The position numbers and the translations under genes were made by a program. A DNA stretch of 64,000 nt, taken from positions 62,001 to 126,000 of the IMG/VR virus record IMGVR_UViG_3300046543_000266, one strand, 5' to 3'. Under the pieces are notes generated by a model that saw only the letters and a list, made by a program, of their open reading frames with translations, was not told the DNA's origin and made no database searches. Shown here piece after piece: positions 5,796-29,331 of the stretch (position 1 is the first letter of the stretch; every line of letters begins with the position of its first letter).

Positions 5796-7145
5796 ATGGC
5801 CACGAACGCCGCTCAACGCCTCACCGCAACTGCTGCCCAACGCAAGAACCCCTCCAATACCAAGACAAAGGCTCGCGCTAACATGAACACGGAAGCAACC
5901 CGCGTGTGCGCCGTTGAACTGCCGAAGTTCCGGTACATCGACGACGTCACCCGTTTCCTCGACACGATGCGTGACGAGATCGACGAGTTGGGTCAGCTCG
6001 TGAAGGTTCAGCAACAGGCTCTGGCCTATCTGCAACGTCCGCGCGCTTTCGTGAAGGCTGCGATGGAAGTATCGGCTGCTGGCTTTTCCTTCAACATCAA
6101 CACTCCGGCCGGTGGTTCCAAGACTCACCTGAAGCGCAAGATCGACCCGGAACTTCCGAAGTTTGTGATTCCGAACATCACGAAGCTGCGCGAGCAGTAC
6201 GCGCTGTCCGAAGATCTGTATGAGAAGCATCGCATGTTGCAAGCTGTCGAGACGCAGGTTGCCATGCAGTTTCCGGAACGCAGCGGCAAGGAATACAACA
6301 ACGCAATCGGCGCGATCAAGGAACTGAAGGACAAGGTCGGTGCGCAGCTGAAGGAAGTTCTGGGCTTCCTGAACTCGGTGGCGTCGGAACACGTACCGAA
6401 GACCTTCATGAAGTACCGTGAAGCGATCATGCAGGAAATCTCCGAGCACGTGATGTTCGAGCAGTCGGAGCAGTTCATGTACGTGAATACCAGCCCGGCG
6501 AAGGAACTGGTGTTCACCAACTACATCATGCTGCAGAATGCGACCAACGACGAAGGCAAGACCACGCCGCATCTGTACATCAGCATCCAGTGGACGGTCG
6601 GCGCTGGCGTCAAGGTGCAAGTCAACCACGAGTTCGAGTTGCCCGCGCAGCTGATGAAGGAAGGCGGCACCGAAGTGGAAAGCGCTGGCGAAGCAGTGAA
6701 GGCTATCAGCCATCTGCTGGACCTCGAAGACTTCAGCACGTCGCTGGGTGTTATCCCGCTGGCAACCCAACTGCGCATGGAACCGTCGCAAATCACGCCG
6801 ACGATGTTCACGTACAAGGACTTCATCAGCCGCATCGACTTCGACACGAACAGCCTGACGTTCATCCTGCGCAAGGGCACCACCCAAGAGCAAGTCGACG
6901 AGATCAAGTATCCGCTGTACGAAGAAGTCAAGGCGCTGTTCCAGAAGGATCTGAACAAGAGCCGCAAGGCCAAGCTCAAGGCGAAGATCAGCCGCCAGAA
7001 GATCAGCTTCGAGCTCATCAACGTGGCCGAGCGTGGCGAAGTCAACAACCACGATGCTGAGTTCCTCGCCGACCGCTTCGGTCTGAACGACAGCCAACTG
7101 CGCAAGGTTGTGAACTTGCTCAACGAAGGCAACAGGGACCAGTGA
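5796..7145 (+). CDS. putative internal head protein (NAAQRL tag)
   Basis: 449-aa ORF with strong codon bias, AGGA RBS, N-terminal TNAAQRLTA. Confidence 0.6.
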   Translation: MATNAAQRLTATAAQRKNPSNTKTKARANMNTEATRVCAVELPKFRYIDDVTRFLDTMRDEIDELGQLVKVQQQALAYLQRPRAFVKAAMEVSAAGFSFNINTPAGGSKTHLKRKIDPELPKFVIPNITKLREQYALSEDLYEKHRMLQAVETQVAMQFPERSGKEYNNAIGAIKELKDKVGAQLKEVLGFLNSVASEHVPKTFMKYREAIMQEISEHVMFEQSEQFMYVNTSPAKELVFTNYIMLQNATNDEGKTTPHLYISIQWTVGAGVKVQVNHEFELPAQLMKEGGTEVESAGEAVKAISHLLDLEDFSTSLGVIPLATQLRMEPSQITPTMFTYKDFISRIDFDTNSLTFILRKGTTQEQVDEIKYPLYEEVKALFQKDLNKSRKAKLKAKISRQKISFELINVAERGEVNNHDAEFLADRFGLNDSQLRKVVNLLNEGNRDQ

Positions 7146-10210: not shown

Positions 10211-10573
10211 ATGACCGTAAAACTCCACGCGGGAATGCGCCTCCTGGCTGACAGCAATGAAGCCGGAGTGGCACTCACTGCCATCAAGAAGATCATCGGC
10301 CCCCACTTCGTCACCGACGAGGACCACGCAGAACAACGCATCCTGTGGCGTAGCAGCAAGATCCAAGCCGAGCTCGACTTGACGCTCGACGACGAAGACA
10401 TGCTGCTGTTCAGCTTCCGCACCCGAGGCTTTGCCGGCGGATTTGACGCTGAGGGCCACACGGCGCACGAGCTGTTCGCCGACATCCGCAAGCAAGTGAC
10501 CGAGTATCAGCCGTCGGGTCGCGTACCCAACGACATCGCGGCTCTGCGCAAGCGGTTTGCCAACATCCGATAA
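10211..10573 (+). CDS. putative internal head protein (LHAGMRL tag variant)
   Basis: 120-aa ORF beginning MTVKLHAGMRLLA. Confidence 0.6.
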   Translation: MTVKLHAGMRLLADSNEAGVALTAIKKIIGPHFVTDEDHAEQRILWRSSKIQAELDLTLDDEDMLLFSFRTRGFAGGFDAEGHTAHELFADIRKQVTEYQPSGRVPNDIAALRKRFANIR

Positions 10574-12263: not shown

Positions 12264-12320
12264 ATGAAACGTGGAACAGTTACCAAACATCAACATAACA
12301 AGGTCATCTATTATGGCTGA
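12264..12320 (+). CDS. 18-aa leader peptide overlapping SNF2 start
   Basis: GAGGA RBS, MKRGTVTKHQHNKVIYYG*, stop overlaps SNF2 ATG (ATGGCTGA). Confidence 0.4.
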   Translation: MKRGTVTKHQHNKVIYYG

Positions 12321-18159: not shown

Positions 18160-19017
18160 ATGCCACTACACGTTCCGAAGGCGTTTCAAAACGCGGGCGT
18201 CTCCACGTCCAAATCACAAGAGCGCGATCGCGTCTCGTACAACAAGAACCGTCTGCGGGCCAACGAACAAGGTATCGCGGATGCACTGAACACCAACGCA
18301 GTCGACACTCCGGTAACACAGGCACTCGAGACGTTCGAAGCCGAGAAGGAAATGGGTCGGATGAATGGCCTCGACTACGAGACGTGGTTGCCGTTCGCTG
18401 CCAAGCTGTACAAGATCAGCCCGCGCATCGAGGACTACATCATTGTCAACACGATGATCTGCCCGTCGGACATTCCGAATCGTAACGGCATCGCGTTCCC
18501 GGCCACGGAGCTCGCGAAGTTCCAGCCGCCGCCCACCAATCGCATGGCGTACAAAGCGTGGGCTGGCTGTCCTGTCCATCTCGAGCACGACAACGAAGTT
18601 CACGAGAAAGCCTATGGCGTGATTCTCGACGCCGCATTGACGAAAGTCTCGGGCTACGGTGGTGGCAAGCTGTGGAAGGTCATGGGGTTGCAGGCAATCG
18701 ACAAGAACAAGTATCCCGACATGGCGCAGAAGGTGTTGACGAAGGAAATCAACACCTACTCGATGGGAGCTCTGGTCGATTACTTCACGTGCGGCTACTG
18801 CGGACAGGAATGCAGCAGCAAGCGGGTGTGCGGTCACATCTCCAGTCCGGCTAACGTCAACTGGAAACAGTACCGTGACTTCGACGGTTCGTCGCATTTG
18901 GCGTTCCTGAACGCTCATGGCATTCAGCCGATCGAATGTTCCATCGTTGCTGACCCGGCGTGGGCTCCTGCTCTGTCCGACGAAGTCTTCGATCCGTGGG
19001 CCAACACCGGAGGCTAG
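18160..19017 (+). CDS. prohead (maturation) serine protease with Cys-rich insertion
   Basis: DIPNRNGIAF, VHLEHDN, YSMG, CGYC...C...CGH pattern of assemblin/HK97-type prohead proteases; lies upstream of scaffold and capsid. Confidence 0.7.
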   Translation: MPLHVPKAFQNAGVSTSKSQERDRVSYNKNRLRANEQGIADALNTNAVDTPVTQALETFEAEKEMGRMNGLDYETWLPFAAKLYKISPRIEDYIIVNTMICPSDIPNRNGIAFPATELAKFQPPPTNRMAYKAWAGCPVHLEHDNEVHEKAYGVILDAALTKVSGYGGGKLWKVMGLQAIDKNKYPDMAQKVLTKEINTYSMGALVDYFTCGYCGQECSSKRVCGHISSPANVNWKQYRDFDGSSHLAFLNAHGIQPIECSIVADPAWAPALSDEVFDPWANTGG

Positions 19018-19018
19018 C

Positions 19019-19669
19019 ATGGTCAAGCTCAATGCTGCGGCGCGACTCATTAACGCCGCAGGTCCGCATCCGGCTGCTACGCAATTCGCCGAGAAGCACG
19101 GCATTCCCATCTACAACGTGGACAACGCGATTGCTGCCAGCCGATTCGGGCTGGTAGTTGCCGAGATCGATAAGGCAGTACAATCGCTGTACGCTCGCGG
19201 GGTTCCCCGCAAGTCCATAAACGTCCACGAGATCAAGTTGATAAAGGGTAAGTCGTTCCCTGCCAACGGTTGGGATGCAGGTGGATTGTTTGAGGATCAC
19301 GACGGTTACGGAATCGTGTCTCTGGCTGCTGGCCAGAAGTTCGGTGACAGTCCGGTGCTCAAACCCGGTGGATGGGCAATAGCGGGCGCGTACATGAACG
19401 ATTCGGTACGCCACGAATTCGGTCATGGTCTGGTCCGATCGTTGATGACGTTCGGTGAAAACCCGACGATGCTTCGGAACGCGTATGTCCGCGAGAAGAG
19501 AGAACCGGGCGGTATCCAACCCAGACTGTCCAAGTACGCTGCTGAGAATGAGTACGAGTACTTCGCGGAAGCGTTTGCTGCGTTCATGCATCCGAAGTTC
19601 AAGACCAGCGGCATCAAGATCTACCCGCCGTTACTAGAAGTGTTCGAGAAACACTTCGGCGTCAAGTAA
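19019..19669 (+). CDS. zincin metallopeptidase (lethal-factor-like) with N-terminal LNAAARL tag
   Basis: VRHEFGHGL (HExxH) and LSKYAAENEYEYFAEAFAAF; GGAGG RBS before ATG 19019. Confidence 0.75.
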   Translation: MVKLNAAARLINAAGPHPAATQFAEKHGIPIYNVDNAIAASRFGLVVAEIDKAVQSLYARGVPRKSINVHEIKLIKGKSFPANGWDAGGLFEDHDGYGIVSLAAGQKFGDSPVLKPGGWAIAGAYMNDSVRHEFGHGLVRSLMTFGENPTMLRNAYVREKREPGGIQPRLSKYAAENEYEYFAEAFAAFMHPKFKTSGIKIYPPLLEVFEKHFGVK

Positions 19670-19695
19670 CAGTTGTTCCACCACGAAGTTCAAAC

Positions 19696-19730
19696 AGCCC
19701 CGCCCGACATCCCAGTCCGGCGGGGCTTTT
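19696..19730 (+). terminator. Intrinsic terminator
   Basis: AGCCCCGCC / GGCGGGGCT followed by TTT. Confidence 0.8.
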
Positions 19731-19835
19731 GACGTTCTGGCTTCAAATCCGCGCAGCACAAACCCCTCGGTCGTTCTGACCACGCAGCACAATCCCACCC
19801 CCTGCAACCTGCAAACCCACAGTTCCCGCAATCGC

Positions 19836-19842
19836 CATTTTA
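19836..19842 (+). promoter_or_regulatory. CATTTTA variant late-type promoter for scaffold/capsid operon
   Basis: One mismatch to AATTTTA; inside the palindrome GCCATTTTAATGGC; upstream of ATG 19912. Confidence 0.4.
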
Positions 19843-19911
19843 ATGGCTGAGCGAGTTTAGTTAGGACCGGTCCTTCATAAACTTGTTTCTTAACATCTCA
19901 GCGAGGAATCT

Positions 19912-21450
19912 ATGGCGATCGTCACCAAGAAGCGGAAAGTCGCAGCAGCGCGCGAAAGCACGTCGTTGCACTTTTCGAACGAAACCACCAAGGCGGTGGA
20001 AGAGAGCAAGCAGCCGCTGCTCAACCATCAAACGGCTGACACTCTGATCGATCCGGAAGACACGACGGACGATCAAGGTTCGACGCACTTCACGAACGAC
20101 ACGAAGTACAGCAAGAAGACGAATCGTCTGCACACCACTGCCGCGAAGAAGCCGGTTCTGGCGCTGGAAGTTCCCGAAGCGTTCGGCAAGAAGGTGCCGA
20201 AGGACGAGGCTCCGGCCGACGAAGCAACGGAAGCATCGCTCGACGACGTGGCTGCTGAAGACGACGGTTGCGAAACCGGTCTGCAAGACACGCAGCACAT
20301 GCCGAACGACATCGATCCGACGGAAGGCTACCTGACGACGGGTTCGGAAGAAGGCGACGACGAGTTCGACGAAGACCTCGAAGACGACGAAGACGAAATC
20401 GACGCCAGCGCCGAATTCGAAGAAGGCACCGGCACGAATCCCCAGTCACTGCTCGAAGCAGACGACGAAGAATGGGATCCGGACTCGGCAGTCGTTGCTG
20501 AATTCGGCGACGAAGACGGCGAAGACGAGTTCTCGGAAGAAGATGAATCGGAAGGCGAAGCTGAAGTCGAAGCCGCTCCGGCATCGGACGACGACATGTC
20601 GGTGGTCGACGTGGACGGTACGGACGACGAAGGCGACGACGTTGTGTTCGCATCGATCGGCCTGCAACTGCACGCCATCAAAGCCAACCGCATCATCGCA
20701 TCGATCGGCAAGAAGCGCGCGATCAAGGCCGGTCACGGCGACGTGTATCTGTCGGATCAGTTCCAAGACGTAGTGGGCGTCGAGATGTCGAAGCACGGTC
20801 TGCGCGCTGGTCTGCAGAAGATGGGCTTCGCACTCGCAACGTTCAACGTGGCGAAGAACGAAGTCGTGAACAAGCGCGTCGAAGCGAAGGCTGCCAAGGT
20901 CACGTCGGCTGTCCGTCGCACCACGCATCAGTCGAACGAAGCACTCGGCCAGTGCTTGGCGATCGCCGCTGTCGGTATCAACCGTCAGTACTTCAAGGAC
21001 GCACGCAACGAACTGCGCGCATCGCTCGAAGAAGAACTCGAAGCGGCTGGCGTTCGTGGCGCGTCGCGTCTCGTGCGCAAGGTGTTCGCATCGAAGGGCG
21101 TCGACTACGCGAAGGCGATTCTCACGCTGGCAAACAAGCTGGTGAACATGCCGGAAACGACGCGTAACCAGTTCGCGGCCGCTCTCGACATGACCAACGA
21201 CGGCGAGATCGAAGACGACGAAGACCTGTTCGCTGAACCGTCGGATCCGGAATTCGTTACGGCCGAAGGCGAAGACGAAGAATTCGACGACGAGTTCGAA
21301 GACGAAAACGACGCACCGAGTTCGGTCCAAGCTGCGCTGGCTCGCCCGGCAAGCAAGGTCCAACGCCGTGAGATCAACGCTGCGAAGACCGGTTACTCGG
21401 TCACCGCAATGGCGATCCTGTCGGGCAAAGCACCGCTGCCGTTCGCCTAA
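19912..21450 (+). CDS. prohead core/scaffold protein
   Basis: Extremely acidic 512-aa protein between protease and capsid genes; strong codon bias. Confidence 0.65.
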   Translation: MAIVTKKRKVAAARESTSLHFSNETTKAVEESKQPLLNHQTADTLIDPEDTTDDQGSTHFTNDTKYSKKTNRLHTTAAKKPVLALEVPEAFGKKVPKDEAPADEATEASLDDVAAEDDGCETGLQDTQHMPNDIDPTEGYLTTGSEEGDDEFDEDLEDDEDEIDASAEFEEGTGTNPQSLLEADDEEWDPDSAVVAEFGDEDGEDEFSEEDESEGEAEVEAAPASDDDMSVVDVDGTDDEGDDVVFASIGLQLHAIKANRIIASIGKKRAIKAGHGDVYLSDQFQDVVGVEMSKHGLRAGLQKMGFALATFNVAKNEVVNKRVEAKAAKVTSAVRRTTHQSNEALGQCLAIAAVGINRQYFKDARNELRASLEEELEAAGVRGASRLVRKVFASKGVDYAKAILTLANKLVNMPETTRNQFAAALDMTNDGEIEDDEDLFAEPSDPEFVTAEGEDEEFDDEFEDENDAPSSVQAALARPASKVQRREINAAKTGYSVTAMAILSGKAPLPFA

Positions 21451-21500
21451 TCCCCAGCCGGGTTTTAGCGCGGTTGCACAATCCGTACTTTTATAGTGAC

Positions 21501-21535
21501 GGTCCAGCGTAGTGGTTAAATCCTAACGCTGGACC
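21501..21535 (+). other. Intergenic stem-loop (mRNA processing/stability?)
   Basis: GGTCCAGCGT / ACGCTGGACC 10-bp stem with no U-tract. Confidence 0.5.
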
Positions 21536-21566
21536 GCACGCAAAACTTCCAATTGGAGAAGCACAC

Positions 21567-22268
21567 ATGTCTCTGTATCTTCCTTTCACGAAAGCAGTCG
21601 ACAGCACGGAAATGCTGACGGCTCCGGGTGCAGTCTTCACCGCTGAAGGTCAAGCACTCGTTCGCGCAGCCAGCGCTCCTGCTGCTGGCGTTCTTCCGGG
21701 CACTGGCGTTGCTGCCAACGACATCTTCGCGGGCTTCGCTCTCGCAGGTACGTCGGCACTGCCGTTCCCGGAATCGTACACCAACAAGGTGGAACAGTTC
21801 CTGGTTCCGGTGACGGGCGTGGTTACGCTGTCGCTCACGCCGGTGGCTGGTCAAGTGTTCCTGCATGACGACACGGCGGGCACCGCCAACACGGCACCGA
21901 CGGTGTCGGGCAAGCAAGTGACCGGTCTCACGGCTGGCAACCAAGTCACCATCACGTACAAGTACGCAGTCAGCGTCGTGCAAGCTCGCGCGCTGTTCGG
22001 CGACGTGCAACCGGGCGGTTACGTCGGCGCATACGTCGGCCAAATCGGCGTGGTCACGCGTGGCTCGATCTGGACGTCGGAATTCGACTCGTCGGCAAAC
22101 TGGGCGATCGCTGGTTCGGACGCATCGCATCAGATCGTCGTCGGCGCAAACGGCCAGCTCAAGCTCGGCACGGTCGGCACGAACGGCGTTGCAGTTCCGG
22201 GCGCATACGTGATCGGCGTTCCGGGTCAAGACGTGCCGTTCCTCGGCATCCGCTTCTCGGCTGCGTAA
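21567..22268 (+). CDS. capsid decoration/minor head protein
   Basis: Gly/Ala/Val-rich beta protein directly upstream of MCP; GGAG RBS. Confidence 0.55.
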   Translation: MSLYLPFTKAVDSTEMLTAPGAVFTAEGQALVRAASAPAAGVLPGTGVAANDIFAGFALAGTSALPFPESYTNKVEQFLVPVTGVVTLSLTPVAGQVFLHDDTAGTANTAPTVSGKQVTGLTAGNQVTITYKYAVSVVQARALFGDVQPGGYVGAYVGQIGVVTRGSIWTSEFDSSANWAIAGSDASHQIVVGANGQLKLGTVGTNGVAVPGAYVIGVPGQDVPFLGIRFSAA

Positions 22269-22290
22269 GCAACCAACAAGGCTTCTTAGT

Positions 22291-22329
22291 CCGGACGCGC
22301 ACTTCAGCATAACGCTACCGCGCATCCGG
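22291..22329 (+). other. Intergenic stem-loop before major capsid gene
   Basis: CCGGA..GCGC / GCGC..TCCGG with inner AGC-ATAAC-GCT. Confidence 0.4.
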
Positions 22330-22361
22330 GCTAATCACAAAACACGAAACGGAGTATCAAG

Positions 22362-23453
22362 ATGCGTACAAAAGTTAAGGTTCGTGCGTCCAAGACGCCG
22401 ATGGTGGCAGCCAGCGAGTATCGCTTCGACGGCGCGCTGACGGGTGAACGTGCAATCGGTCGCAACGGCGAAATCAACGCCAGCAACAAGCGTGACCTCA
22501 TCAACCGCCAAATGGCTTTCGTGCAAGCTGCTTCGAACGGCCAAGTCGCCGGCGATGCAGTGTTCGCTTCGGCAGAACAAGCAACGAAGGCTTCGAAGGA
22601 ACTCATCGCTGCTGCGTTCAACGACGGCGAAGCTCACCGCGTTCTGGGCGAGCGCATGGCTGATTCGCTGTACATCACGGCGAATCGCCAAGGCTTCATG
22701 CGCAAGTACCTGACCAAGATCACGGTCGAGCAGGGCGCAATCCCCCGCTTCCCGCTGCGCACGAAGAACGTGACGGCTGTGTACTCGACGTCGCCGACGA
22801 AGATCCAGTCGCAAATCACGCGCGACAAGTGGTTCACGCCGCCGGAACTGCAAGTGGTCACCCGTCCGTTCATTCCGATGAACGAACTGAACCAGTCGGC
22901 TGGCGACGTGCTGCAAGAAAAGTACGTGGAAGCAACGGAAGCCATCATGGTCGGTGAAGACCGCCTGTGGTACAACCAAGTGAACCAGATCGTCGGCGTG
23001 GACAACCCCCTGTCGATCATCTCTGGTCAGCTGACGCCGTACACGTTCGCGCAAGTCATGACCAACGTCACGCGTTGGGGCCTGAAGGCACCGCACGTCC
23101 TGATCGCCACGGACATCTATCAGGACATCATCGGTAACGCGGACTTCTTCAACGCGATCGATCCGGTTGCTCGCCACGAACTGCTGTTGACCGGCGAACT
23201 CGGCGTGATGTACGGTTGCACGATCACGTCGGACGCGTACCGTCACCCGGAGCACAAGGTGCTGAACCAAGGCGAATTCTTCGTGATCGCCGACGCTCTG
23301 AACCACGGCGCGTACTCGGATCGCGGCGGTCTGCAATCGCAGCCGACCGACATCTCGGTCGAGAAGATCCCGGGTCGCGGTTGGGTGATGTTCGAATCGC
23401 TCGCCGTGTCGGTTGCCAACAGCCGCTCGGTAGCAAAGGGCCTCCGTATCTAA
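22362..23453 (+). CDS. major capsid protein (HK97-fold, inferred)
   Basis: 363 aa, follows protease-scaffold-decoration; DIYQDII...ELGVMYGCTIT...GEFFVIA pattern typical of HK97-fold C-terminal half; strong codon bias. Confidence 0.8.
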   Translation: MRTKVKVRASKTPMVAASEYRFDGALTGERAIGRNGEINASNKRDLINRQMAFVQAASNGQVAGDAVFASAEQATKASKELIAAAFNDGEAHRVLGERMADSLYITANRQGFMRKYLTKITVEQGAIPRFPLRTKNVTAVYSTSPTKIQSQITRDKWFTPPELQVVTRPFIPMNELNQSAGDVLQEKYVEATEAIMVGEDRLWYNQVNQIVGVDNPLSIISGQLTPYTFAQVMTNVTRWGLKAPHVLIATDIYQDIIGNADFFNAIDPVARHELLLTGELGVMYGCTITSDAYRHPEHKVLNQGEFFVIADALNHGAYSDRGGLQSQPTDISVEKIPGRGWVMFESLAVSVANSRSVAKGLRI

Positions 23454-23473
23454 TACGGGAACGTCGAGTGATG

Positions 23474-23517
23474 CAGTATCAGGTAGCCGCATAAATGCAA
23501 AGTGCTACCTGATACTG
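23474..23517 (+). other. Perfect 14-bp inverted repeat downstream of MCP
   Basis: CAGTATCAGGTAGC / GCTACCTGATACTG. Confidence 0.7.
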
Positions 23518-23543
23518 TGTCTATCAAACGCACACAAGGAAAC

Positions 23544-23999
23544 ATGATGAAGACATACAATCGTGCTCTCGACTTCATGGCACTGGCTGCAGTCCAGTTC
23601 ACCAAGGGTCGTCCGCAAGTTGCAGCAAAGCTGATGGTCAAGGCCACGGCAAGCTCGGACTTCGCACAAGCCATCGCGATCATCGAAGCGTCGAACGGTC
23701 AAGCGTTCGCAGCCAAGGAAGCTGAAAAGGCCCGTCTGGCAGCCGCAGCCAAGAAGGTCGCAGCGAAGAAGAAGGTGAAGGCTTCGGAAGAAGACGAAGC
23801 CCTCGAATCGCTGGTCGGTGACCTCGACGAACTCGACACCGACGCGGGTGACGCAGTCGAAGACGAAGTTGAACTCGACGAAGTCGAAGCATCGGATGAA
23901 ACGGACGAGGAAGAAGACGCTGGCGACGACGAAGTCGAAGCACCGTCGGAAGCTTTCGCCTCGGCGCTGGCCTCGATGGTCAAGCGCGCCGCCAAGTAA
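23544..23999 (+). CDS. acidic head core-like protein
   Basis: Lys/Ala-rich then Asp/Glu-rich; AAGGA RBS before ATG 23544. Confidence 0.65.
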   Translation: MMKTYNRALDFMALAAVQFTKGRPQVAAKLMVKATASSDFAQAIAIIEASNGQAFAAKEAEKARLAAAAKKVAAKKKVKASEEDEALESLVGDLDELDTDAGDAVEDEVELDEVEASDETDEEEDAGDDEVEAPSEAFASALASMVKRAAK

Positions 24000-24023
24000 G
24001 TTCGCGCACGCGCAGTAAAAGAC

Positions 24024-24064
24024 AGAGGCCCGCCGGTGATTGTGCCGCCGGGCCTCTTCCGTTT
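24024..24064 (+). terminator. Probable intrinsic terminator
   Basis: AGAGGCCCG / CGGGCCTCT followed by TCCGTTT. Confidence 0.6.
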
Positions 24065-24090
24065 GTGCGGTATATTCCGGAGCTCTTCCT

Positions 24091-24759
24091 ATGTCGGAAA
24101 TGCAGGCAATCCAGACAATCGATCACATGGTGCTTGCTGGATTCCAACAGCGTTTCCAGCAAGTGTTCAACTGCCCCTGCCTGTTCATCAACGCTAACGA
24201 TAAGACGCGCATCCTGCAGAAGGTGTTTGGCGAAGGTCAGCCGATCACGTATCCGTATGCGTACTTCGTCGTTCAGTCGATGGGCGCTAACAATGAGTCC
24301 TACAACGCGCACGTGATGGCACGCCGCGGACTGGTTGTGAACGTAGCAGCGAATGACCTACTGCAGACGGTTCGGGTTGTGCCTACGAACTTCGTTATCG
24401 AGGTATCGTATGTCACCAACAAGTTCGAGTCGGTGGAACAGGGTTCGGTGTTAGCGTTCGTGCGTCGGTGGTTGCTGGCGCGACGGGTGGGTTACCTGAA
24501 GTTCAGCATCAACTACGGGCGACTGCAGTTTGGTATCAGTCACACGCTGGAAGAATCTGTGAACATCCCCCAACGGGAGAATGTCACTGAGAGCGAAACG
24601 TCTTACGTCATTACCACCTCCGTCACCACTCACGGTTACGTAAGTGAGCCGGTCCTTGGCCGACAAGGCAAGGTGACGGAAATCCGGCAGAACACCTCGG
24701 TTGGACTGCCCGGAACGGTAGTGTCCACGCAGTTTTCCGAGTTCCCGAAACAGTCCTAG
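24091..24759 (+). CDS. putative tail completion/terminator protein
   Basis: 222-aa ORF with GGAG RBS between capsid cluster and sheath; positional inference. Confidence 0.45.
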   Translation: MSEMQAIQTIDHMVLAGFQQRFQQVFNCPCLFINANDKTRILQKVFGEGQPITYPYAYFVVQSMGANNESYNAHVMARRGLVVNVAANDLLQTVRVVPTNFVIEVSYVTNKFESVEQGSVLAFVRRWLLARRVGYLKFSINYGRLQFGISHTLEESVNIPQRENVTESETSYVITTSVTTHGYVSEPVLGRQGKVTEIRQNTSVGLPGTVVSTQFSEFPKQS

Positions 24760-24770
24760 GAGTAAATCGC

Positions 24771-25088
24771 ATGGCTACGAAGGTTATCAATACCGGCCGT
24801 GTTCCTCTTCAAGTCGGCATCATTCTGGAAGACGGCACCAAGTCGTCTATCCGTGTGATGGGTCGCGGTCGTCCTGATCTGGCGGAAGGTGTGACCGTCG
24901 ATCCGAACTGGCTGGTACTGCACGGCGGCGACGTCCGTGTGGTGGAAGAGAAGTCGATTCAAGTGGCCGAAGTCGCCACGCAGATCGACAACACGAAGAA
25001 AGAAACGGCCCCGGCAGCAACGACTGCCACGCCGTCCACCGTCGAAACCCCGGCTGCGACCGTCACTGCTAAGGAGGACAAGCAATGA
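24771..25088 (+). CDS. hypothetical virion protein
   Basis: AGGAG RBS; ATGA overlap with the sheath gene. Confidence 0.65.
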   Translation: MATKVINTGRVPLQVGIILEDGTKSSIRVMGRGRPDLAEGVTVDPNWLVLHGGDVRVVEEKSIQVAEVATQIDNTKKETAPAATTATPSTVETPAATVTAKEDKQ

Positions 25089-27022
25089 CTATCTCGGCAA
25101 AGCAAGGTTCGAAGGTAATCGTACAGGAAATCAACCTGTCGCAAGTGATCACCAGTGCTTCCACCTCGGTGGTTGCTCAAGTGGTCGTCGCCAAACAAGG
25201 CCGTACCATCCCGGTCCAGTTCACCAACGCGCAAGACTATCTGGCGGAGTACGGTAATCCGAACGCTCAGGTCAGCTTCGACGTGTATTGCGGACTCGAC
25301 TACTTCGGCGAAGGCAATCAGCTGTGGGGTCTGCGCGTTGCTGGCACGGGCGCTCTGTACTCGGCACTGCTGATGTACACCGACGGTTCGGCTACGCATC
25401 TGCTGCCGATCGCCGCAGGTGTGGTTGACCCGACCAAGCCCAACTGGACGGCCATCCTCCCGAGCGGCGCGCAGAACGAAGCAATCGCGTTGTTCTACCC
25501 GAACAAGGGTCCGGGTTCGTACGGCGACAACGTAGCGCTGTCGATCACCAGCAACAATATCGCGACGCCGACGGGTTTCGCCGTGACCTCGGCAGCGACG
25601 GGCGGTACGCTGGTTCCGGCCACGTATCAGTACCAGATCTCCAGCGTGTCGCTCACGGGCGAGACTCTGGCAACCAATCCGGCGCAAGTCGTGATCGGCG
25701 GCGCGGCAGTAACGAACGTCGTGAATCTGTCGTGGACAGCGGATCCGCAAGCAATCGGGTACAACATCTACGGTCGCGTAGGTGCGGGCGTTGGCCTACT
25801 CGCTCAAGTTGGTCAGGGCGTGACCACGTTCACGGATACCGGCGCGCTGACTCCGGATACCACCAAGACTCCGGTGGTGAGCCCGGCTAACGCAGCACAG
25901 CCGCTCCCGACGTTCGGCCTCAACGTGTTCGACACGACGCAGTCCACGTCGTACCCGGTGGAACAGTTCAGCGTGTCGCTGGATGACTTCACCGACAGCA
26001 CGGGCACCGAAACGGAACTGGAACAACGCATCAACCCGTTCTCGACGTACATCCAAGTGACCTCGAATGTGCCGGCTCTGCTGGACACACCGGCAGTCAC
26101 GACGACGTCGCTGACTTCGATGAAGGGCGGTGACAGCGGTGCGGCTCCGACGAGCTTCCAAGTTGCGGCAGCGTGGAACACCTTCAGCAACAAGCAACTG
26201 TACGCGGTCAACATCCTGCTCAACTCGGGTCACGCAGATCCGACGGTGCAGTTGGCGATGGATACGTTGGCGCAGAAGCGTGGTGACTGCGTGGCAATGC
26301 TCGACATCCCGTCGGCAAGCCAACAGTTCCAGCAAGCGATCAACTACCGGAACCTCAACCTGAATCTGAATTCCACGTACTCGGCGCTGTTCGCACCCGA
26401 CGTGCTGGAAGCGGATACGATCAACGGCAAGCAACAGTATGTGCCGTTCTCGGGATGGGCGGCAGCACTGTGCGCTCGTACCGATCGGGTTGCCAACCCG
26501 TCGTTCTCGATCGCTGGTCTGAATCGCGGTTTGCTCAACGTGCTGAAGACGCGCTACACCTACGACGACGGCCAAGCGGACGCTCTGTTCAACGCGCAAG
26601 TCAACTACACCAAGACCTTCATCGGTCAAGGTATCGCGCTGTGGGAACAACAGACGTGTGCTGCGCAGTTCTCGGCGCTGTCGTGGGTTTCGGTTCGCCG
26701 TATCGTCAACGTGATCAAGGTCGCGCTGTATCAGTTCTTGCTGTATTCGCTGCAAGAGCCGAACGACGACTTCCTGGGTCGCCAGATCGTTAGCTCGTGC
26801 TCGGATTATCTGCAGTCGATCCAGAACGCGCGCGGCATCTCGAGCTACACGGTGATCTCCGACAGCCAGAACAACTCGGCGCAGGACTTCAACAGCGGCG
26901 TCCGTAACGTGACGGTCATCATCGTCCCGACGATCCCGACGCACATCATCAACTTGCAAGTCGTGATCAGCAAGCAAGGTGTGTCGTTCACGGAAGCCCT
27001 GTCGCAAGTCAATCCGGGCTAA
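25085..27022 (+). CDS. tail sheath protein
   Basis: 645 aa; N-terminal VIVQEINLS, C-terminal PFSGWAAALCARTD...IAGLNRG, LYNAQVN-like segment, SVRR, EPND. Confidence 0.9.
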   Translation: MTISAKQGSKVIVQEINLSQVITSASTSVVAQVVVAKQGRTIPVQFTNAQDYLAEYGNPNAQVSFDVYCGLDYFGEGNQLWGLRVAGTGALYSALLMYTDGSATHLLPIAAGVVDPTKPNWTAILPSGAQNEAIALFYPNKGPGSYGDNVALSITSNNIATPTGFAVTSAATGGTLVPATYQYQISSVSLTGETLATNPAQVVIGGAAVTNVVNLSWTADPQAIGYNIYGRVGAGVGLLAQVGQGVTTFTDTGALTPDTTKTPVVSPANAAQPLPTFGLNVFDTTQSTSYPVEQFSVSLDDFTDSTGTETELEQRINPFSTYIQVTSNVPALLDTPAVTTTSLTSMKGGDSGAAPTSFQVAAAWNTFSNKQLYAVNILLNSGHADPTVQLAMDTLAQKRGDCVAMLDIPSASQQFQQAINYRNLNLNLNSTYSALFAPDVLEADTINGKQQYVPFSGWAAALCARTDRVANPSFSIAGLNRGLLNVLKTRYTYDDGQADALFNAQVNYTKTFIGQGIALWEQQTCAAQFSALSWVSVRRIVNVIKVALYQFLLYSLQEPNDDFLGRQIVSSCSDYLQSIQNARGISSYTVISDSQNNSAQDFNSGVRNVTVIIVPTIPTHIINLQVVISKQGVSFTEALSQVNPG

Positions 27023-27034
27023 AGCTGTAACCAA

Positions 27035-27068
27035 CGAGGCGACAGTGCTAGTACAGGCTGTCGCCTTG
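27035..27068 (+). terminator. Stem-loop after sheath gene
   Basis: AGGCGACAG / CTGTCGCCT stem. Confidence 0.55.
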
Positions 27069-27088
27069 TAGACTAAGAGGTGACTCAG

Positions 27089-27469
27089 ATGGGATTCAAA
27101 CTCAACGCAGCAACGCGCCTTAGTGCTGATACCGAAACCAGCAAGGACGGTAAAGCAGTCAGCCCGGCGAATGGTTTCCGCGAGCAGAACGAGGACAACC
27201 TGAAGGACCGACAGCAAGACAGCCAGAAGTCGGTCGATGAAAAGCCCAAAGCCGAAACCACGGCGGATGCTGAGGGTGACGACGGCGCGAGCACTGGTGA
27301 TACAACTATCACCCTGGACATTCCGCAGGACAACGACGACGATATGAGCTCGATCGACGCTGTGGTAACGGCCGCAGTTAAACGACTGCACGCTGAGCAA
27401 GAAGTCGAAGCGGACGCCGACCCGAAGCTCTTCAACATGGCAAACCAACCGATGGGGCCAATGGCATGA
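27089..27469 (+). CDS. acidic putative internal head protein (LNAATRL tag)
   Basis: GAGGT RBS; MGFKLNAATRLSA. Confidence 0.65.
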   Translation: MGFKLNAATRLSADTETSKDGKAVSPANGFREQNEDNLKDRQQDSQKSVDEKPKAETTADAEGDDGASTGDTTITLDIPQDNDDDMSSIDAVVTAAVKRLHAEQEVEADADPKLFNMANQPMGPMA

Positions 27470-27774
27470 TCATCAATGCGGCTACCCGCCTCAAGGCGTC
27501 GGAATACGAGGTCAAGCTGCACAAAGCTTCTGATCTATTCACCCGATTGAACGCGGTCTTCCGCAACAAGCTGTCGCTGAACAAAGTCGACGCTTCGATC
27601 TGCGTGAAGGACGTCAGCGTGGTGCTGGTCCTCAAAGCGTTGCAGCGCATGGGTTACGACCTACGTGCTCGCGGCGACAGTGAAGCGGCACACATCTTGT
27701 CGCTCAACGGCACGCCTGAACTGCAAGTACAATCGCCCCGCGAGGATTGGGACCCGGTTATCAGTTTCGTCTGA
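27466..27774 (+). CDS. putative internal head protein (INAATRL tag)
   Basis: ATGA coupling; MIINAATRLKA. Confidence 0.65.
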   Translation: MIINAATRLKASEYEVKLHKASDLFTRLNAVFRNKLSLNKVDASICVKDVSVVLVLKALQRMGYDLRARGDSEAAHILSLNGTPELQVQSPREDWDPVISFV

Positions 27775-27793
27775 GACCCGTTGCAGCAATCCC

Positions 27794-27800
27794 AATTTGA
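27794..27800 (+). promoter_or_regulatory. AATTTGA late-type promoter motif
   Basis: Intergenic, upstream of tail tube ATG 27840. Confidence 0.6.
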
Positions 27801-27839
27801 CGGTGTCTTCGACAAACAGACATACTAAGGAGTATCACA

Positions 27840-28346
27840 ATGGCTCGTTCCAGCTTGTATGATGCACAAGCAGTGGCGGACCCGGCTCAGAGTTGGAACT
27901 TCGACTTGTTCCTTCCGGCAATCCCGGGTTCGTCGGATACCCGTGCTCTCACGTGGAAGTGCATGTCCACGGGTCTGCCCGGTTTCCAAATCGAAAAGGT
28001 CGCAGTTCCGCTGCACGGCGTGGAGTTGCAGTACGCTGGCCGCAAGACCTTCAGCCACAGCTTCCAGTCGGTGTTCATGGAAGCCTCGGACTGGTCGACC
28101 CGTTCACAGTTCTACGCTTGGTCCGAAGCTACTCGCTCCTGGGTCAACAACAGCGGCACGTTCGCCAGCGCCTACAAGGTGAATGCGCAGATCGTGGTCT
28201 ACAACGACCTGCCGCAAGTCGCACGCACGATCAACGTGTGGGGTCTGTGGCCCGAACAGATCGCTGACGTAGCGCTGGACGGTGCGAACTCGACGCTGGT
28301 CACGCTCGACATCACGTGGTCGTTCGACTACGTAACGGATGCTTGA
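27840..28346 (+). CDS. tail tube protein
   Basis: 168 aa; DPAQSWNFDL...C.ST.LPG...ELQYAGRKTF...W...Y...G.WP...LD...TWSFDY, T4 gp19-like pattern. Confidence 0.85.
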   Translation: MARSSLYDAQAVADPAQSWNFDLFLPAIPGSSDTRALTWKCMSTGLPGFQIEKVAVPLHGVELQYAGRKTFSHSFQSVFMEASDWSTRSQFYAWSEATRSWVNNSGTFASAYKVNAQIVVYNDLPQVARTINVWGLWPEQIADVALDGANSTLVTLDITWSFDYVTDA

Positions 28347-28348
28347 TC

Positions 28349-28558
28349 ATGATCGTCACCTCGGCGGCATCCCGTCTGGTGGCGGCAACCCACTCGTTTG
28401 CGTTTGAAGTGCGTATCCTTGACGACAACGGCCAGCACGGCGTTTTCCGAAAGACTGTAGACGCAGCAACGCGCGGAGCCGCCTGGATAAAGCTGACCAA
28501 GGATCTCAAGAGTATGAAGGTCCTGGAGTCGGTCTACCAAATCACGAGCACACCATGA
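28349..28558 (+). CDS. small putative internal head protein (TSAASRL tag variant)
   Basis: MIVTSAASRLVAA; ATGA coupling to next gene. Confidence 0.55.
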   Translation: MIVTSAASRLVAATHSFAFEVRILDDNGQHGVFRKTVDAATRGAAWIKLTKDLKSMKVLESVYQITSTP

Positions 28559-29331
28559 AAACCCGACTGCACGCTGCACGTCGGTTGGTAGTTGCAGAAG
28601 GGGAGTGGTTCCACGCGATGGAACCCGAGATGCAGAAGCAGTATCTGGAAGAGCATCCGGGTAGTAAGTACGCGAAGGATCACACGTCAACGGCACCGGC
28701 CAATCCGAAGGCGCTACCTGCGCCCACTCAGAAACCGAAGTCTGAAGTAAAACCTGCTAGTCCGAAGCCGACGCCCGAAGAAGTCAAGAAGGTGTCACCG
28801 AAGGCGAAGGCCGCAGGTAGCAAGGAACGTGTTGACAGCGCTAAGAAGCTGAAGGCAACAGCTCCTGGTCTGGCGTCCCAGTTGATCGGCGGCGTCAAGG
28901 ATTTCGGCCACGATCTGAGTGCAGTTGGCAACTTCCTGAATGGTCACCCCGAGCATGGTGACATGAAGCGTGTTGGTTCGATGCTGGTCACACTTCTAGG
29001 CACGGGCGCAATGATGACGGCTCTGGGTGCAACTGGCCCCGTCGGCTTTCTGGCGTTCATGGCACTGAAGAAGTTGGCGCTTCCCGAGTTGGTTGGATGC
29101 GCGAAGAGCGTGTACAAGGGAACCAAGCGTCAGTTCGCACCTGCGGATCGGTCCAAGATGTTGCCGGAGTATCAGGATGCGTGTGTTCGTTTGCTGGCTG
29201 CTTCTAAGCAAGATCAAGAAACGTTGCTGGAACTGATTGAGCTTCTCGCTGACATGGTTGCTCACGGGGAAATCCCGCAATCGGCTCTCGACGAAGCGCA
29301 AGCAGAACTGGAAGCCACGCACAAGAAGTAA
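28555..29331 (+). CDS. putative internal head protein with hydrophobic hairpin (LHAARRL tag)
   Basis: MKTRLHAARRLVVA; Lys/Pro-rich linker; hydrophobic MLVTLLGTGAMMTALGATGPVGFLAFMAL. Confidence 0.6.
   Translation: MKTRLHAARRLVVAEGEWFHAMEPEMQKQYLEEHPGSKYAKDHTSTAPANPKALPAPTQKPKSEVKPASPKPTPEEVKKVSPKAKAAGSKERVDSAKKLKATAPGLASQLIGGVKDFGHDLSAVGNFLNGHPEHGDMKRVGSMLVTLLGTGAMMTALGATGPVGFLAFMALKKLALPELVGCAKSVYKGTKRQFAPADRSKMLPEYQDACVRLLAASKQDQETLLELIELLADMVAHGEIPQSALDEAQAELEATHKK

What the first reader, a model, noticed from the sequence alone, without database searches (positions are those of the whole stretch)
18160..29331. Predicted prohead-protease specificity [V/I/L]-x-A|[A/S/E/D], shared by scaffold, capsid and tagged cargo
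Seen: most tags end in L-x-A (RLTA, RLLA, RLKA, RLSA, RLVA). The same triplet delimits acidic blocks in the scaffold (IDA-S, LEA-D, VVA-E, VEA-A, VFA-S, VTA-E, INA-A), the MCP N-terminus (VRA-S, INA-S, VQA-A, VFA-S), 23544 (VKA-S, VEA-S) and 27089 (LHA-E, VEA-D). Established: T4 gp21 cuts after (L/I)-x-E and the phiKZ protease after (S/A/G)-x-E, while herpes assemblin, a related fold, cuts Ala-Ser bonds. Inference: this protease cleaves after Ala, like assemblin, and trims the tag off cargo.
Basis: inference. Interest (0 to 1): 0.62.

Follow-up and report, generated by a model that had tools for sequence, protein, structure and literature searches.

The report
Alanine-cutting capsid protease motif, predicted
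In this RSL1-like giant phage, the capsid protein, the scaffold, the protease and about ten tagged cargo proteins share a short motif, (Val/Ile/Leu)-x-Ala followed by a small residue, which is most likely where the head protease cuts. That would be the cutting rule of herpesvirus proteases, not the glutamate rule of T4 or phiKZ, but nobody has mapped the cut ends.

Summary
All 20 listed tripeptides are present. With tags removed, the head and tagged proteins hold 100 [VIL]xA against about 72 expected (z about 3.8). Other spacings, [VIL]xE and [AGS]xE are not enriched.

A blind scan of all residue pairs recovers T4's known L/I-x-E rule from its scaffold gp22. The same scan puts VxA first in this phage's head set.

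The signature [VIL]–variable–Ala–small is kept at N-proximal sites:
- 118 capsid protein homologues;
- 12 scaffolds, including a site just before the C-terminal tail;
- 66 of 93 protease N-extensions.

In 36 tags from 12 genomes, conservation stops exactly at R-L-x-A-[A/T/S/D].

The protease has the T4 gp21/herpes assemblin fold (Z 10.5 and about 7). Published lengths imply that the related phage G capsid protein is cut after Ala27.

Cleavage after Ala is therefore the best-supported reading (about 0.6), but it remains inference.
- P1' is small (A/S/T), not A/S/E/D;
- N-proximal sites carry a basic P4;
- most sites inside the acidic blocks, and capsid VFA-S, are not conserved in position;
- conserved Glu residues keep a T4-like rule alive as a rival.

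The parts
18160..19017 (+). Prohead (head maturation) protease, 285 aa. The variable N-extension is residues 1-56 and the conserved domain is residues 57-285.
   Evidence: phrog_18299, E 6e-87. AF2 model pLDDT 91. VIA-align gives T4 gp21 5jbl Z 10.5, rmsd 2.7 Å over 134 residues, and herpesvirus proteases Z 5.2-7.4. No Pfam hit.
18577..18579 (+). His140 codon (HLEHDN), the putative catalytic His.
   Evidence: Nearly invariant (at least 90%) in 80 homologues; His143 is invariant. Falls on T4 gp21 His85 in the hhalign alignment, which is not significant on its own. Coordinates.
18760..18762 (+). Ser201 codon (NTYSMG), the putative nucleophile.
   Evidence: Invariant in 80 homologues. Falls on T4 gp21 Ser140 in the hhalign alignment. 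Coordinates.
18253..18264 (+). Candidate autoprocessing site R-L-R-A|N in the protease N-extension (L32-R33-A34|N35).
   Evidence: 66 of 93 homologous N-extensions hold at least one [VIL]xA[small], against 31.8 +/- 4.4 in shuffles.
19019..19669 (+). Tagged cargo, 216 aa, with an HEFGH metalloprotease-like motif. The tag MVKLNAAARLINA| spans 19019-19057.
   Evidence: Tag. Weak ATLF-family hit, 20 bits, below the 27.4-bit cutoff.
19912..21450 (+). Scaffold-like acidic protein, 512 aa: an acidic N-region, a conserved core (about residues 248-430), an acidic C-region and a basic C-tail.
   Evidence: Holds 23 [VIL]xA against 11.7 expected. All 12 orthologues are 1.4-2.3-fold enriched, and [VIL]xE is depleted. 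Ranks first of 249 proteins genome-wide.
19939..19950 (+). Scaffold N-proximal site K-V-A-A|A (residues 10-13).
   Evidence: [VI]-x-A-[ASG] in 12 of 12 scaffolds, with variable P2 and a basic P4 in 10 of 12.
20644..20655 (+). Scaffold site V-F-A|S (residues 245-248), at the boundary between the acidic N-region and the conserved core.
   Evidence: P1 Ala in 12 of 12 and P2 Phe in 10 of 12. P3 is V in only 5 of 12; where it is not, P4 is hydrophobic.
21325..21336 (+). Scaffold site V-Q-A|A (residues 472-475), just before the basic C-terminal tail. Its position is like the herpes M-site.
   Evidence: [VI]-x-A in 10 of 12, Ala in 12 of 12, P2 variable (Q/H/K/E/T/S). The pseudorabies M-site is VQA-S (PMC4498786).
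22362..23453 (+). Major capsid protein, 363 aa, HK97 fold. Residues 1 to about 70-96 form a likely propeptide.
   Evidence: phrog_2522, E 1e-99. PDB 6wkk (phage G gp27) aligns from residue 77. The cut at phage G residue 27|28 maps to G96|E97 here.
22380..22391 (+). Capsid protein site 1: K-V-R-A|S (residues 7-10).
   Evidence: In 118 homologues: P3 V78/I33/L5, P2 variable (2.45 bits), P1 A113/S4/G1, P1' A58/S45.
22473..22484 (+). Capsid protein site 2: E-I-N-A|S (residues 38-41).
   Evidence: [IL]-N-A-S is invariant in 118 homologues, but the whole block is conserved. It is kept as L-N-A|Y in Erwinia phage Y3, at 35% identity.
22521..22532 (+). Capsid protein site 3: F-V-Q-A|A (residues 54-57).
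   Evidence: P3 L89/I16/V8, P2 variable (2.33 bits), P1 A115, P1' A81/S31.
22560..22571 (+).
   Evidence: Conserved in only 30 of 118 homologues. It lies in an indel-rich linker, residues 58-76.
23544..23999 (+). Small protein, 151 aa, with an acidic C-half and the sites VKA|S and VEA|S.
   Evidence: Nine [VIL]xA in 151 residues. Orthologues are aligned. No family hit.
27089..27469 (+). Tagged cargo, 126 aa. The tag MGFKLNAATRLSA| spans 27089-27127. Later sites are LHA|E and VEA|D.
   Evidence: Ranks seventh of 249 by motif enrichment.
27466..27774 (+). Tagged cargo, 102 aa. The tag MIINAATRLKA| spans 27466-27498.
28349..28558 (+). Tagged small protein, 69 aa. The tag MIVTSAASRLVA| spans 28349-28384.
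28555..29331 (+). Tagged cargo, 258 aa. The tag MKTRLHAARRLVVA| spans 28555-28596.
   Evidence: Ranks sixth of 249.
519..1787 (+). Tagged cargo outside the given range, 422 aa, with a SprT-like metalloprotease domain. The tag MTIALNAAARLTA| spans 519-557.
   Evidence: Tag. PF10263 at 37.8 bits, above the 25.6-bit cutoff.
5796..7145 (+). Tagged cargo outside the given range, 449 aa. The tag MATNAAQRLTA| spans 5796-5828.
10211..10573 (+). Tagged cargo outside the given range, 120 aa. The tag MTVKLHAGMRLLA| spans 10211-10249.

Best explanation
**Context.** The window is the head module of a 218-kb RSL1-like jumbo myovirus.

**Protease.** The 285-aa protease is a Ser/His enzyme of the T4 gp21 / herpes assemblin fold. 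This much is shown by the fold match.

**Proposed mechanism (inferred).**
- The protease enters the prohead together with the scaffold.
- It cuts after Ala in an extended-strand motif: P3 Val/Ile/Leu, P2 any residue, P1 Ala, P1' small (Ala/Ser/Thr).
- N-proximal sites also carry a basic P4.

**Expected consequences (inferred).**
- About ten cargo proteins lose a 11-14-residue tag, M-x-K-[IL]-x-A-A-x-R-L-x-A|. This is analogous to the 10-residue capsid targeting sequence of T4, whose last residues form the gp21 site.
- The roughly 60-96-residue N-terminal region of the capsid protein is cut into short peptides.
- The scaffold's acidic flanks are cut up, and its C-terminal tail is severed at V-Q-A|A, as at the herpes M-site.
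- The protease trims its own N-extension.
For: **1. Fold.** AF2 model pLDDT 91. T4 gp21 Z 10.5, and herpesvirus protease entries Z 5.2-7.4. H140 is nearly invariant (at least 90%) and S201 invariant in 80 homologues; they sit in gp21 order.

**2. Enrichment specific to the i/i+2 spacing.**
- Head set: 100 against 72 expected. With a small or acidic P1': 45 against 22.
- No enrichment of other spacings or of xE motifs.
- VxA is the top gap-1 pair of 400.
- The scaffold ranks first and the capsid protein fifth of 249 proteins.

**3. Positive control.** The same blind scan of T4 gp22 returns LxE and IxE as the top two pairs. [LI]xE occurs 16 times against 5.4 expected, while [VIL]xA is flat.

**4. 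Conservation with a free P2.**
- Capsid sites 7-10 and 54-57 in 118 homologues.
- Scaffold N-terminal site in 12 of 12, and the pre-tail site with Ala in 12 of 12.
- All 12 scaffolds are enriched: 254 against 151 in total. [VIL]xE is depleted, 71 against 96.

**5. Tags.**
- In 36 tags found without requiring Ala, 24 have Ala at R+3 (p = 4e-16).
- P1' is A/T/S in 29 of the 35 tags of the set.
- Entropy jumps from about 2 to 3.2-3.8 bits immediately after P1'.
- Seven of the 12 tags that lack Ala at R+3 carry V/I-x-A|[AS] 2-7 residues further on; two have Ala one residue later.
- Ala at R+3 is not on the helical face of Leu at R+1. That fits strand-like protease binding better than a helix interface (inference).

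**6. External anchor.**
- The phage G capsid protein gp27 is a homologue.
- It goes from 282 to 255 residues by N-terminal sequencing (PMC5646251 Table 1).
- That places the cut at VALA|QAMANP; the mass check gives 28.17 kDa.
- Phage G gp19 is a homologue of this protease, E 7e-12.

**7. Protease N-extensions.** 66 of 93 carry the motif, against 32 expected.
Against: - No mature N-terminus is known for this phage or any close relative. The RSL1 virion papers were not held.
- The motif was defined after looking at these proteins. It is low in information and also occurs in folded regions that are presumably not cut.
- Homologues are not independent, so the pooled z-scores are inflated.
- The phage G site has Ala at P3, not V/I/L. 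It maps here to V-L-G|E (P1 Gly), and [VIL]xG is not enriched.
- Scaffolds of more distant relatives (Y3, Bxz1, phage G) show no VxA enrichment.
- The capsid N-region also holds conserved Glu residues (E19, E29, E37, E72). Seven of 35 tags have A-x-E right after the tag.
- The protease-tag complex prediction gave no verdict.
Confidence: 0.6

Rival explanations
1. The protease keeps the T4/phiKZ rule and cuts after Glu (x-x-E). The [VIL]xA pattern would then be a docking or structural feature near the true sites.
For: - The capsid N-region has conserved Glu residues with partly fitting P3: A-[ST]-E19, [SAG]-x-E29, N-G-E37, and E72 inside an otherwise variable linker.
- Seven of 35 tags read A-x-E directly after the tag, for example KASE|Y, which matches capsid AASE|Y.
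- The closest solved fold is gp21, a Glu-specific enzyme (PMC9026906).
Against: - [VIL]xE and [AGS]xE are not enriched in the head proteins (z about -0.2). [VIL]xE is depleted in the 12 scaffolds and [AGS]xE is at expectation there. In T4 the true motif is threefold enriched.
- Glu sits at variable or absent positions after most tags, whereas Ala at R+3 is fixed.
- Phage G matures after Ala although five Glu residues lie upstream.
Confidence: 0.12
2. The tag and the N-proximal [KR]-[VIL]-x-A-small modules are binding motifs for the scaffold, capsid interior or protease. They would not be cut there, and the protease would have another or a loose specificity.
For: - The tag consists of two tandem modules, K-[IL]-x-A-A and R-L-x-A-[ATS], which looks like a recognition element.
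- Some [VIL]xA sites lie in conserved, probably folded regions (scaffold 261-263; capsid 137, 247), where conservation needs no protease.
- More distant relatives lack the enrichment.
Against: - The enrichment extends through barely alignable acidic regions of all 12 scaffolds (N-region z 4.7, C-region z 5.3). A single docking motif would not be needed there.
- Seven tags that lost R-L-x-A regained V/I-x-A|[AS] a few residues downstream.
- In T4 the targeting and cleavage elements coexist in one 10-residue tag (PMC9026906).
Confidence: 0.2
3. The pattern is a chance or compositional artefact of an Ala/Val/Leu-rich proteome (57% G+C), read after the fact.
For: - [VIL]xA is expected at about 2% of positions.
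- The non-head proteins also show a slight excess, 1298 against 1230.
- Single-pair z-scores of about 3 are near the maximum expected among 400 tests.
Against: - The enrichment survives local shuffles.
- It is specific to one spacing.
- It recurs in every one of the 12 scaffolds.
- It concentrates in head proteins (p = 4e-6).
- It coincides with conserved columns flanking a variable P2.
Confidence: 0.03

Closest known systems
T4 gp21 prohead protease with the capsid targeting sequence of internal proteins
   Same: - It is the closest solved fold (Z 10.5), with the same His...Ser order.
- There is a separate acidic scaffold enriched in the protease's own motif.
- Short N-terminal tags on diverse cargo end in the cleavage motif. 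In T4, targeting depends on tag residues 4 and 7 and processing on residues 8 and 10 (PMC9026906).
   Different: - T4 cuts after Glu (L/I-x-E). Here P1 is predicted to be Ala, and [VIL]xE is depleted in the scaffolds.
- No Pfam S77 hit, and hhalign to gp21 is not significant.
- The tag sequence is unrelated.
- This protease has an extra CxxC...CxH insert.
Herpesvirus assemblin (pUL26N / HCMV protease)
   Same: - Same fold superfamily (Z 5.2-7.4 for about 18 entries).
- The predicted motif equals the assemblin sites: pseudorabies R-site YLQA-T and M-site VQA-S (PMC4498786). The general consensus (V/L/I)-x-A|S is quoted from my own knowledge.
- A conserved V-x-A site sits just before the scaffold's C-terminal tail, as at the M-site.
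   Different: - Sequence identity is only about 10%.
- The third catalytic residue was not established here.
- Protease and scaffold are separate genes, although the relative Bxz1 gp95 is a fusion.
- Many more predicted sites and cargo tags.
- Whether the shared specificity is inherited or convergent is unknown.
phiKZ gp175 / SPN3US gp245 giant-phage prohead proteases
   Same: Jumbo myovirus heads in which many head proteins, including ejected or internal proteins, carry N-terminal propeptides removed at a three-residue motif (PMC10052503).
   Different: - Those enzymes cut after A/S/G-x-E, and that motif is not enriched here.
- No sequence similarity was detected.
- The RSL1-like clade uses one short, near-identical tag rather than long, diverse propeptides.
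Bacillus phage G gp19 protease and gp27 capsid protein
   Same: - The protease is homologous (tblastn E 7e-12) and so is the capsid protein (E 1e-18; PDB 6wkk).
- The capsid protein loses 27 residues, which places the cut after Ala (PMC5646251).
   Different: - The site is V-A-L-A|Q: P3 is Ala and P2 is Leu.
- The equivalent position here is V-L-G|E.
- There is no RSL1-type tag and no VxA enrichment in phage G gp21.

Membership tests
gp21 / assemblin-fold prohead serine proteases (MEROPS clan SH: S21, S77, S78) | Assemblin-like beta-barrel fold | tested here: met
   AF2 model pLDDT 91. VIA-align gives T4 gp21 Z 10.5 (rmsd 2.7 Å, 134 of 165 residues), then about 18 herpes protease entries at Z 5.2-7.4. 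These stand above the unrelated MCE-domain rows at Z 6.0 or less.
gp21 / assemblin-fold prohead serine proteases (MEROPS clan SH: S21, S77, S78) | Catalytic His followed about 50-70 residues later by the nucleophilic Ser, both invariant | tested here: inconclusive
   S201 is invariant and H140 nearly invariant (at least 90%) in 80 homologues; H143 is invariant. hhalign places H140 and S201 on T4 His85 and Ser140, but with probability 0.02, and the T4 residue numbers are from memory. The third triad member was not identified.
gp21 / assemblin-fold prohead serine proteases (MEROPS clan SH: S21, S77, S78) | Sequence-profile membership (Pfam Peptidase_S77, S78 or S21) | tested here: not met
   No Pfam hit even at E 10. 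A profile search of PDB sequences found nothing. Only PHROG 18299 'head maturation protease' matches. This is a fold-level relative, not a member of a curated sequence family.
gp21 / assemblin-fold prohead serine proteases (MEROPS clan SH: S21, S77, S78) | Gene placed in the head module next to the scaffold and capsid protein genes | tested here: met
   The order protease, tagged cargo, scaffold, structural protein, capsid protein is kept in 12 genomes.
Assemblin-type specificity (V/L/I)-x-A|S | Substrates are cut between Ala and a small residue, with a hydrophobic P3 | not testable with these tools
   Only indirect support: enrichment and conservation, plus the phage G capsid protein cut after Ala27, derived from published lengths.
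Assemblin-type specificity (V/L/I)-x-A|S | A maturational site near the scaffold C-terminus that frees the capsid-binding tail | tested here: inconclusive
   A [VI]-x-A-[AST] site is conserved 10 of 12 (Ala 12 of 12) about 38 residues from the C-terminus, before a conserved tail. That the tail binds the capsid protein is assumed, not shown.
T4-type capsid targeting sequence | A short N-terminal peptide shared by unrelated cargo proteins and ending in the protease motif | tested here: met
   36 tags in 12 genomes sit on proteins with unrelated bodies (SprT-like, HExxH and unknown). Conservation ends at A-[ATSD].
T4-type capsid targeting sequence | The tag is sufficient for packaging and is removed in the virion | not testable with these tools
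   This needs fusion-protein packaging and virion mass spectrometry. The complex prediction gave no verdict.

The most novel reading that the evidence does not exclude
A clade of jumbo phages (RSL1, BcepSauron, Motura and many metagenomic relatives) uses a gp21-fold protease with the herpesvirus assemblin rule (V/I/L)-x-A|small. This includes an M-site-like cut before the scaffold tail. The clade also has a portable 11-14-residue tag, built from two such modules, that loads diverse enzymes into the capsid. If so, the Ala-Ser rule would not be a herpesvirus peculiarity. It would occur within the phage branch of the lineage, either as an ancestral trait or as a repeated solution.
Probability: 0.4. 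Interest if true: 0.7.

Novelty: new variant of a known kind. Interest (0 to 1): 0.6.

Why it matters
- **Few known rules.** Only a handful of prohead-protease specificities are known to me. The well-mapped ones (T4, phiKZ, 201phi2-1, SPN3US) all cut after Glu.
- **Link to herpesviruses.** A phage enzyme of the same fold that cuts after Ala like assemblin would tighten the phage-herpesvirus maturation parallel. It would also give a tractable bacterial model for that specificity.
- **Practical uses.** The rule predicts the mature ends of the capsid protein, scaffold fragments and about ten packaged proteins in a whole clade of Burkholderia, Ralstonia and Achromobacter jumbo phages. The short tag is a candidate handle for loading foreign proteins into such capsids in laboratory strains, as was done with the T4 tag.
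- **Method.** The blind residue-pair scan of scaffolds recovered the T4 rule, so it may be a general way to guess protease specificity from sequence.

Tried and rejected
- **RSL1 virion papers.** Yamada 2010 and Effantin 2013, which might give mature N-termini, are not held. The phage G structure paper PMC7316594 and Welch 1991 are not held either. The supplements of Hua 2017 carry no N-terminal sequence.
- **phiMatilda preprint.** Its proteomics used trypsin-only searches and says nothing on cleavage.
- **Literature on Ala-cutting phage proteases.** The search found none.
- **Pfam and PDB-sequence searches with the protease.** Nothing found.
- **First protease fold.** With a six-sequence alignment it was poor (pLDDT 50). 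It was replaced by an 80-sequence alignment.
- **hhalign of the protease profile against T4 gp21.** Not significant. It was used only to see which residues line up.
- **Complex prediction.** Protease domain plus the first 40 residues of the 27089 protein gave no verdict: scores 0.04, 0.47 and 0.00 against a mark of 0.32. This is no evidence either way.
- **First gene calling.** Calling by ORF length picked antisense ORFs. It was replaced by a codon-usage caller.
- **Signal peptidase I (A/V-x-A rule).** Rejected because the tags have no hydrophobic core.
- **Host Prp-type processing.** Rejected because that system belongs to Firmicutes. This rests on my own knowledge.
- **[VIL]xG (small P1 in general).** Not enriched.

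Full report
**What the region is.** The window is positions 62001-126000 of a 217,605-bp phage genome. Its head module resembles Ralstonia phage RSL1, Burkholderia phages BcepSauron/Saruman and BCSR5, and Achromobacter phage Motura, with capsid protein identity of 62-83%. On the + strand the gene order is:
- SNF2-type helicase (12313-17004) and two small ORFs;
- protease (18160-19017; phrog_18299 'head maturation protease', E 6e-87);
- a tagged HExxH protein (19019-19669);
- a 512-aa acidic scaffold-like protein (19912-21450);
- a virion structural protein (21567-22268);
- the major capsid protein (22362-23453; phrog_2522);
- a small acidic protein (23544-23999);
- sheath (25085-27022);
- four small tagged proteins (27089, 27466, 28349, 28555), with the tube gene (27840-28346) lying between 27466 and 28349.

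The same order holds in 12 genomes: four isolates (L001-L004) and seven metagenomic contigs (L005-L011) besides the window.

**Observation check.** A codon-usage gene call gave 307 genes. In 14 head or tagged proteins, with the first 20 residues of tagged proteins removed:
- [VIL]xA occurs 100 times against about 72 expected. The z is 3.7-4.0, unchanged when shuffling within 30- or 15-residue windows.
- [VIL]A, [VIL]xxA, [VIL]xxxA and Ax[VIL] are at expectation.
- [VIL]xA followed by A/S/E/D occurs 45 times against 22 (z about 5). Followed by any other residue it is flat, 54 against 49.
- [VIL]xE and [AGS]xE are at expectation.

A scan of all 400 a-x-b pairs puts VxA first (z 3.3) and LxA in the top ten. 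AS is the top adjacent pair. Taken singly, these values are near what 400 tests can give. Ranking all 249 proteins of 80 residues or more by [VIL]xA[small or acidic] enrichment puts the scaffold first, the capsid protein fifth, and tagged proteins sixth, seventh, eighth and eleventh. Six marked proteins in the top 11 has p = 4e-6.

**Positive control.** The same blind scan of the T4 scaffold gp22 returns LxE (z 4.6) and IxE (z 3.0) as the top two of 400 pairs. [LI]xE occurs 16 times against 5.4 expected, while [VIL]xA is flat and other spacings are flat or depleted. L/I-x-E is the established gp21 rule (PMC9026906). So a scaffold does carry an excess of its protease's motif, and the method finds it. 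In this phage the excess is [VIL]xA. All 12 scaffolds are 1.4-2.3-fold enriched (254 against 151 in total). The excess is present in the barely alignable acidic N-region (z 4.7) and C-region (z 5.3) as well as in the core. [VIL]xE is depleted, 71 against 96. These pooled z-values are inflated by shared ancestry.

**Conservation in the capsid protein.** In 118 homologues at 68-93% identity:
- Residues 7-10 read [V78 I33 L5]-x-[A113 S4 G1]-[A58 S45], with P2 free (2.45 bits).
- Residues 54-57 read [L89 I16 V8]-x-A115-[A81 S31], with P2 free (2.33 bits).
- Residues 38-41 ([IL]-N-A-S) are invariant inside a conserved block. They survive as L-N-A|Y in Erwinia phage Y3 at 35% identity.
- A further [VIL]-x-A-A lies at residues 82-85.

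**Conservation in the scaffold and protease.**
- In 12 scaffolds the N-proximal [VI]-x-A-[ASG] is present 12 of 12.
- The site before the core has Ala 12 of 12, though P3 is V in only 5.
- [VI]-x-A-[AST], just before the conserved basic C-tail, is present 10 of 12 (Ala 12 of 12) with a free P2.
- In 93 protease homologues, 66 N-extensions hold the motif against 32 expected.

**Tags.** Genome-wide there are nine clear tags (window 519, 5796, 10211, 19019, 27089, 27466, 28349, 28555, and one 1.7 kb beyond the window end) and one or two variants. Relatives carry the same tag on their own, often unrelated, small proteins.
- A search that did not require Ala found 36 N-terminal tags in 12 genomes. 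Of these, 24 have Ala at R+3 (p = 4e-16).
- Of the 12 without it, two have Ala one residue later. Seven carry V/I-x-A|[AS] 2-7 residues downstream: VFA|S, VTA|S and VHA|S in three L011 paralogues, and VTA|A, VMA|S, ILA|A and VEA|A elsewhere.
- Two have none.
- The aligned logo is M-x-K-[IL]-x-A-A-x-R-L-x-A-[A15 T10 S4 D4]. Entropy rises to 3.2-3.8 bits right after that last position.
- The tag is two tandem modules of the type basic-[VIL]-x-A-small. The capsid protein, scaffold and protease each begin with one such module.
- This mirrors the T4 capsid targeting sequence, whose residues 4 and 7 target and whose residues 8 and 10 (P3 and P1) direct processing (PMC9026906).

**The protease.**
- Pfam and PDB-sequence searches find nothing.
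- With an 80-sequence alignment, AlphaFold gives pLDDT 91 for residues 57-285.
- Foldseek ranks T4 gp21 first and herpesvirus proteases next.
- VIA-align gives gp21 Z 10.5 (rmsd 2.7 Å, 134 residues) and about 18 herpes protease entries at Z 5.2-7.4.
- S201 (YSMG) is invariant and H140 nearly invariant. A non-significant hhalign alignment puts them on gp21 Ser140 and His85. The gp21 residue numbers are from my memory.

**External anchor.** The capsid protein matches phage G gp27 (PDB 6wkk, E 5e-16). Hua et al. list gp27 as 282 residues (31.2 kDa) as encoded and 255 residues (28.2 kDa) as mature, from N-terminal sequencing (PMC5646251 Table 1). Removing 27 residues gives ...EEGRVALA|QAMANPIR, and residues 28-282 weigh 28.17 kDa. 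The cut therefore follows Ala, although five Glu residues lie upstream. Phage G gp19, called a head maturation protease (PMC12484599), is homologous to this protease (tblastn E 7e-12). Limits of this anchor:
- The site is my arithmetic from published lengths.
- P3 there is Ala.
- The equivalent position here is V94-L95-G96|E97.

**Comparison with known rules.** T4 cuts after L/I-x-E. SPN3US and phiKZ cut after A/S/G-x-E (PMC10052503). Pseudorabies assemblin sites are given as YLQA-T and VQA-S (PMC4498786). The general assemblin consensus (V/L/I)-x-A|S is from my own knowledge. The predicted rule here equals the assemblin rule, and the scaffold site before the C-tail resembles the M-site in position.

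**Rivals.**
- *A Glu rule.* It is kept alive by the conserved E19, E29, E37 and E72 in the capsid N-region and by A-x-E after 7 of 35 tags. It is opposed by the lack of any xE enrichment and by phage G.
- *A binding motif only.* This fits the modular tag. It does not explain the excess throughout the divergent acidic regions, nor the regained V-x-A|S in tags that lost R-L-x-A.
- *Chance.* It is largely excluded.
- More distant relatives (Y3 gp141, Bxz1 gp95, phage G gp21) show no VxA excess. The rule may therefore be specific to the RSL1-like clade.

**Verdict.** The refined motif is [VIL]-x-A|[A/S/T], with a basic P4 at N-proximal sites. Virion N-terminomics would settle it.

Noticed in passing
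window 519-1787 and 19019-19669; L006 5875-7503; L010 6635-7405: Some of the tagged cargo looks like proteases. Window 519-1787 has a SprT-like domain above the Pfam cutoff. Window 19019-19669 has HEFGH and a weak, below-cutoff ATLF-family hit. In relatives, a SprT-like protein (L006) and a Peptidase_C1 protein (L010) occupy the slot after the head protease, but no tag was found on either.
   Followed up: partly
L005 5194-7227: In one metagenomic relative the protease gene is 677 aa and carries an intein (Hint_2 and a faint LAGLIDADG hit).
   Followed up: no
window 18790-18837 (protease residues 211-226): An invariant C211-x2-C214 ... C224-x-H226 motif forms a zinc-ribbon-like insert in the protease. 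T4 gp21 has no such motif.
   Followed up: no
window 19957-19990 and about 20170-20200 (scaffold N-region): Two copies of S-T-x-H-F-x-N, and a P-x-E-G-Y-L motif, are conserved in the otherwise divergent acidic N-region in most of the 12 scaffolds. They are possible docking motifs unrelated to the cleavage motif.
   Followed up: no
L014 7839-11951 (Mycobacterium phage Bxz1 gp95): A distant homologue of the protease is fused to a C-terminal region of about 1100 residues (1370 aa in all). This is the protease-scaffold fusion layout of herpes UL26.
   Followed up: no
G000 61963, 37 nt upstream of the window start; the ORF runs into window 1 to about 510: There is another tagged protein, MTVKLTALTRLLLTEGE..., one of the two tags without Ala at or near R+3. 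Here L-T-E follows instead.
   Followed up: no
window 17080-17736: A 218-aa protein with tandem EVKQEAAP(APAP) repeats lies just upstream of the protease. It has no family hit.
   Followed up: no
genome positions 148542-149351 (-) and 163180-163794 (-), outside the window: Two unannotated proteins (269 and 204 aa) rank second and third genome-wide for [VIL]xA[small] enrichment. They may be further head proteins.
   Followed up: no
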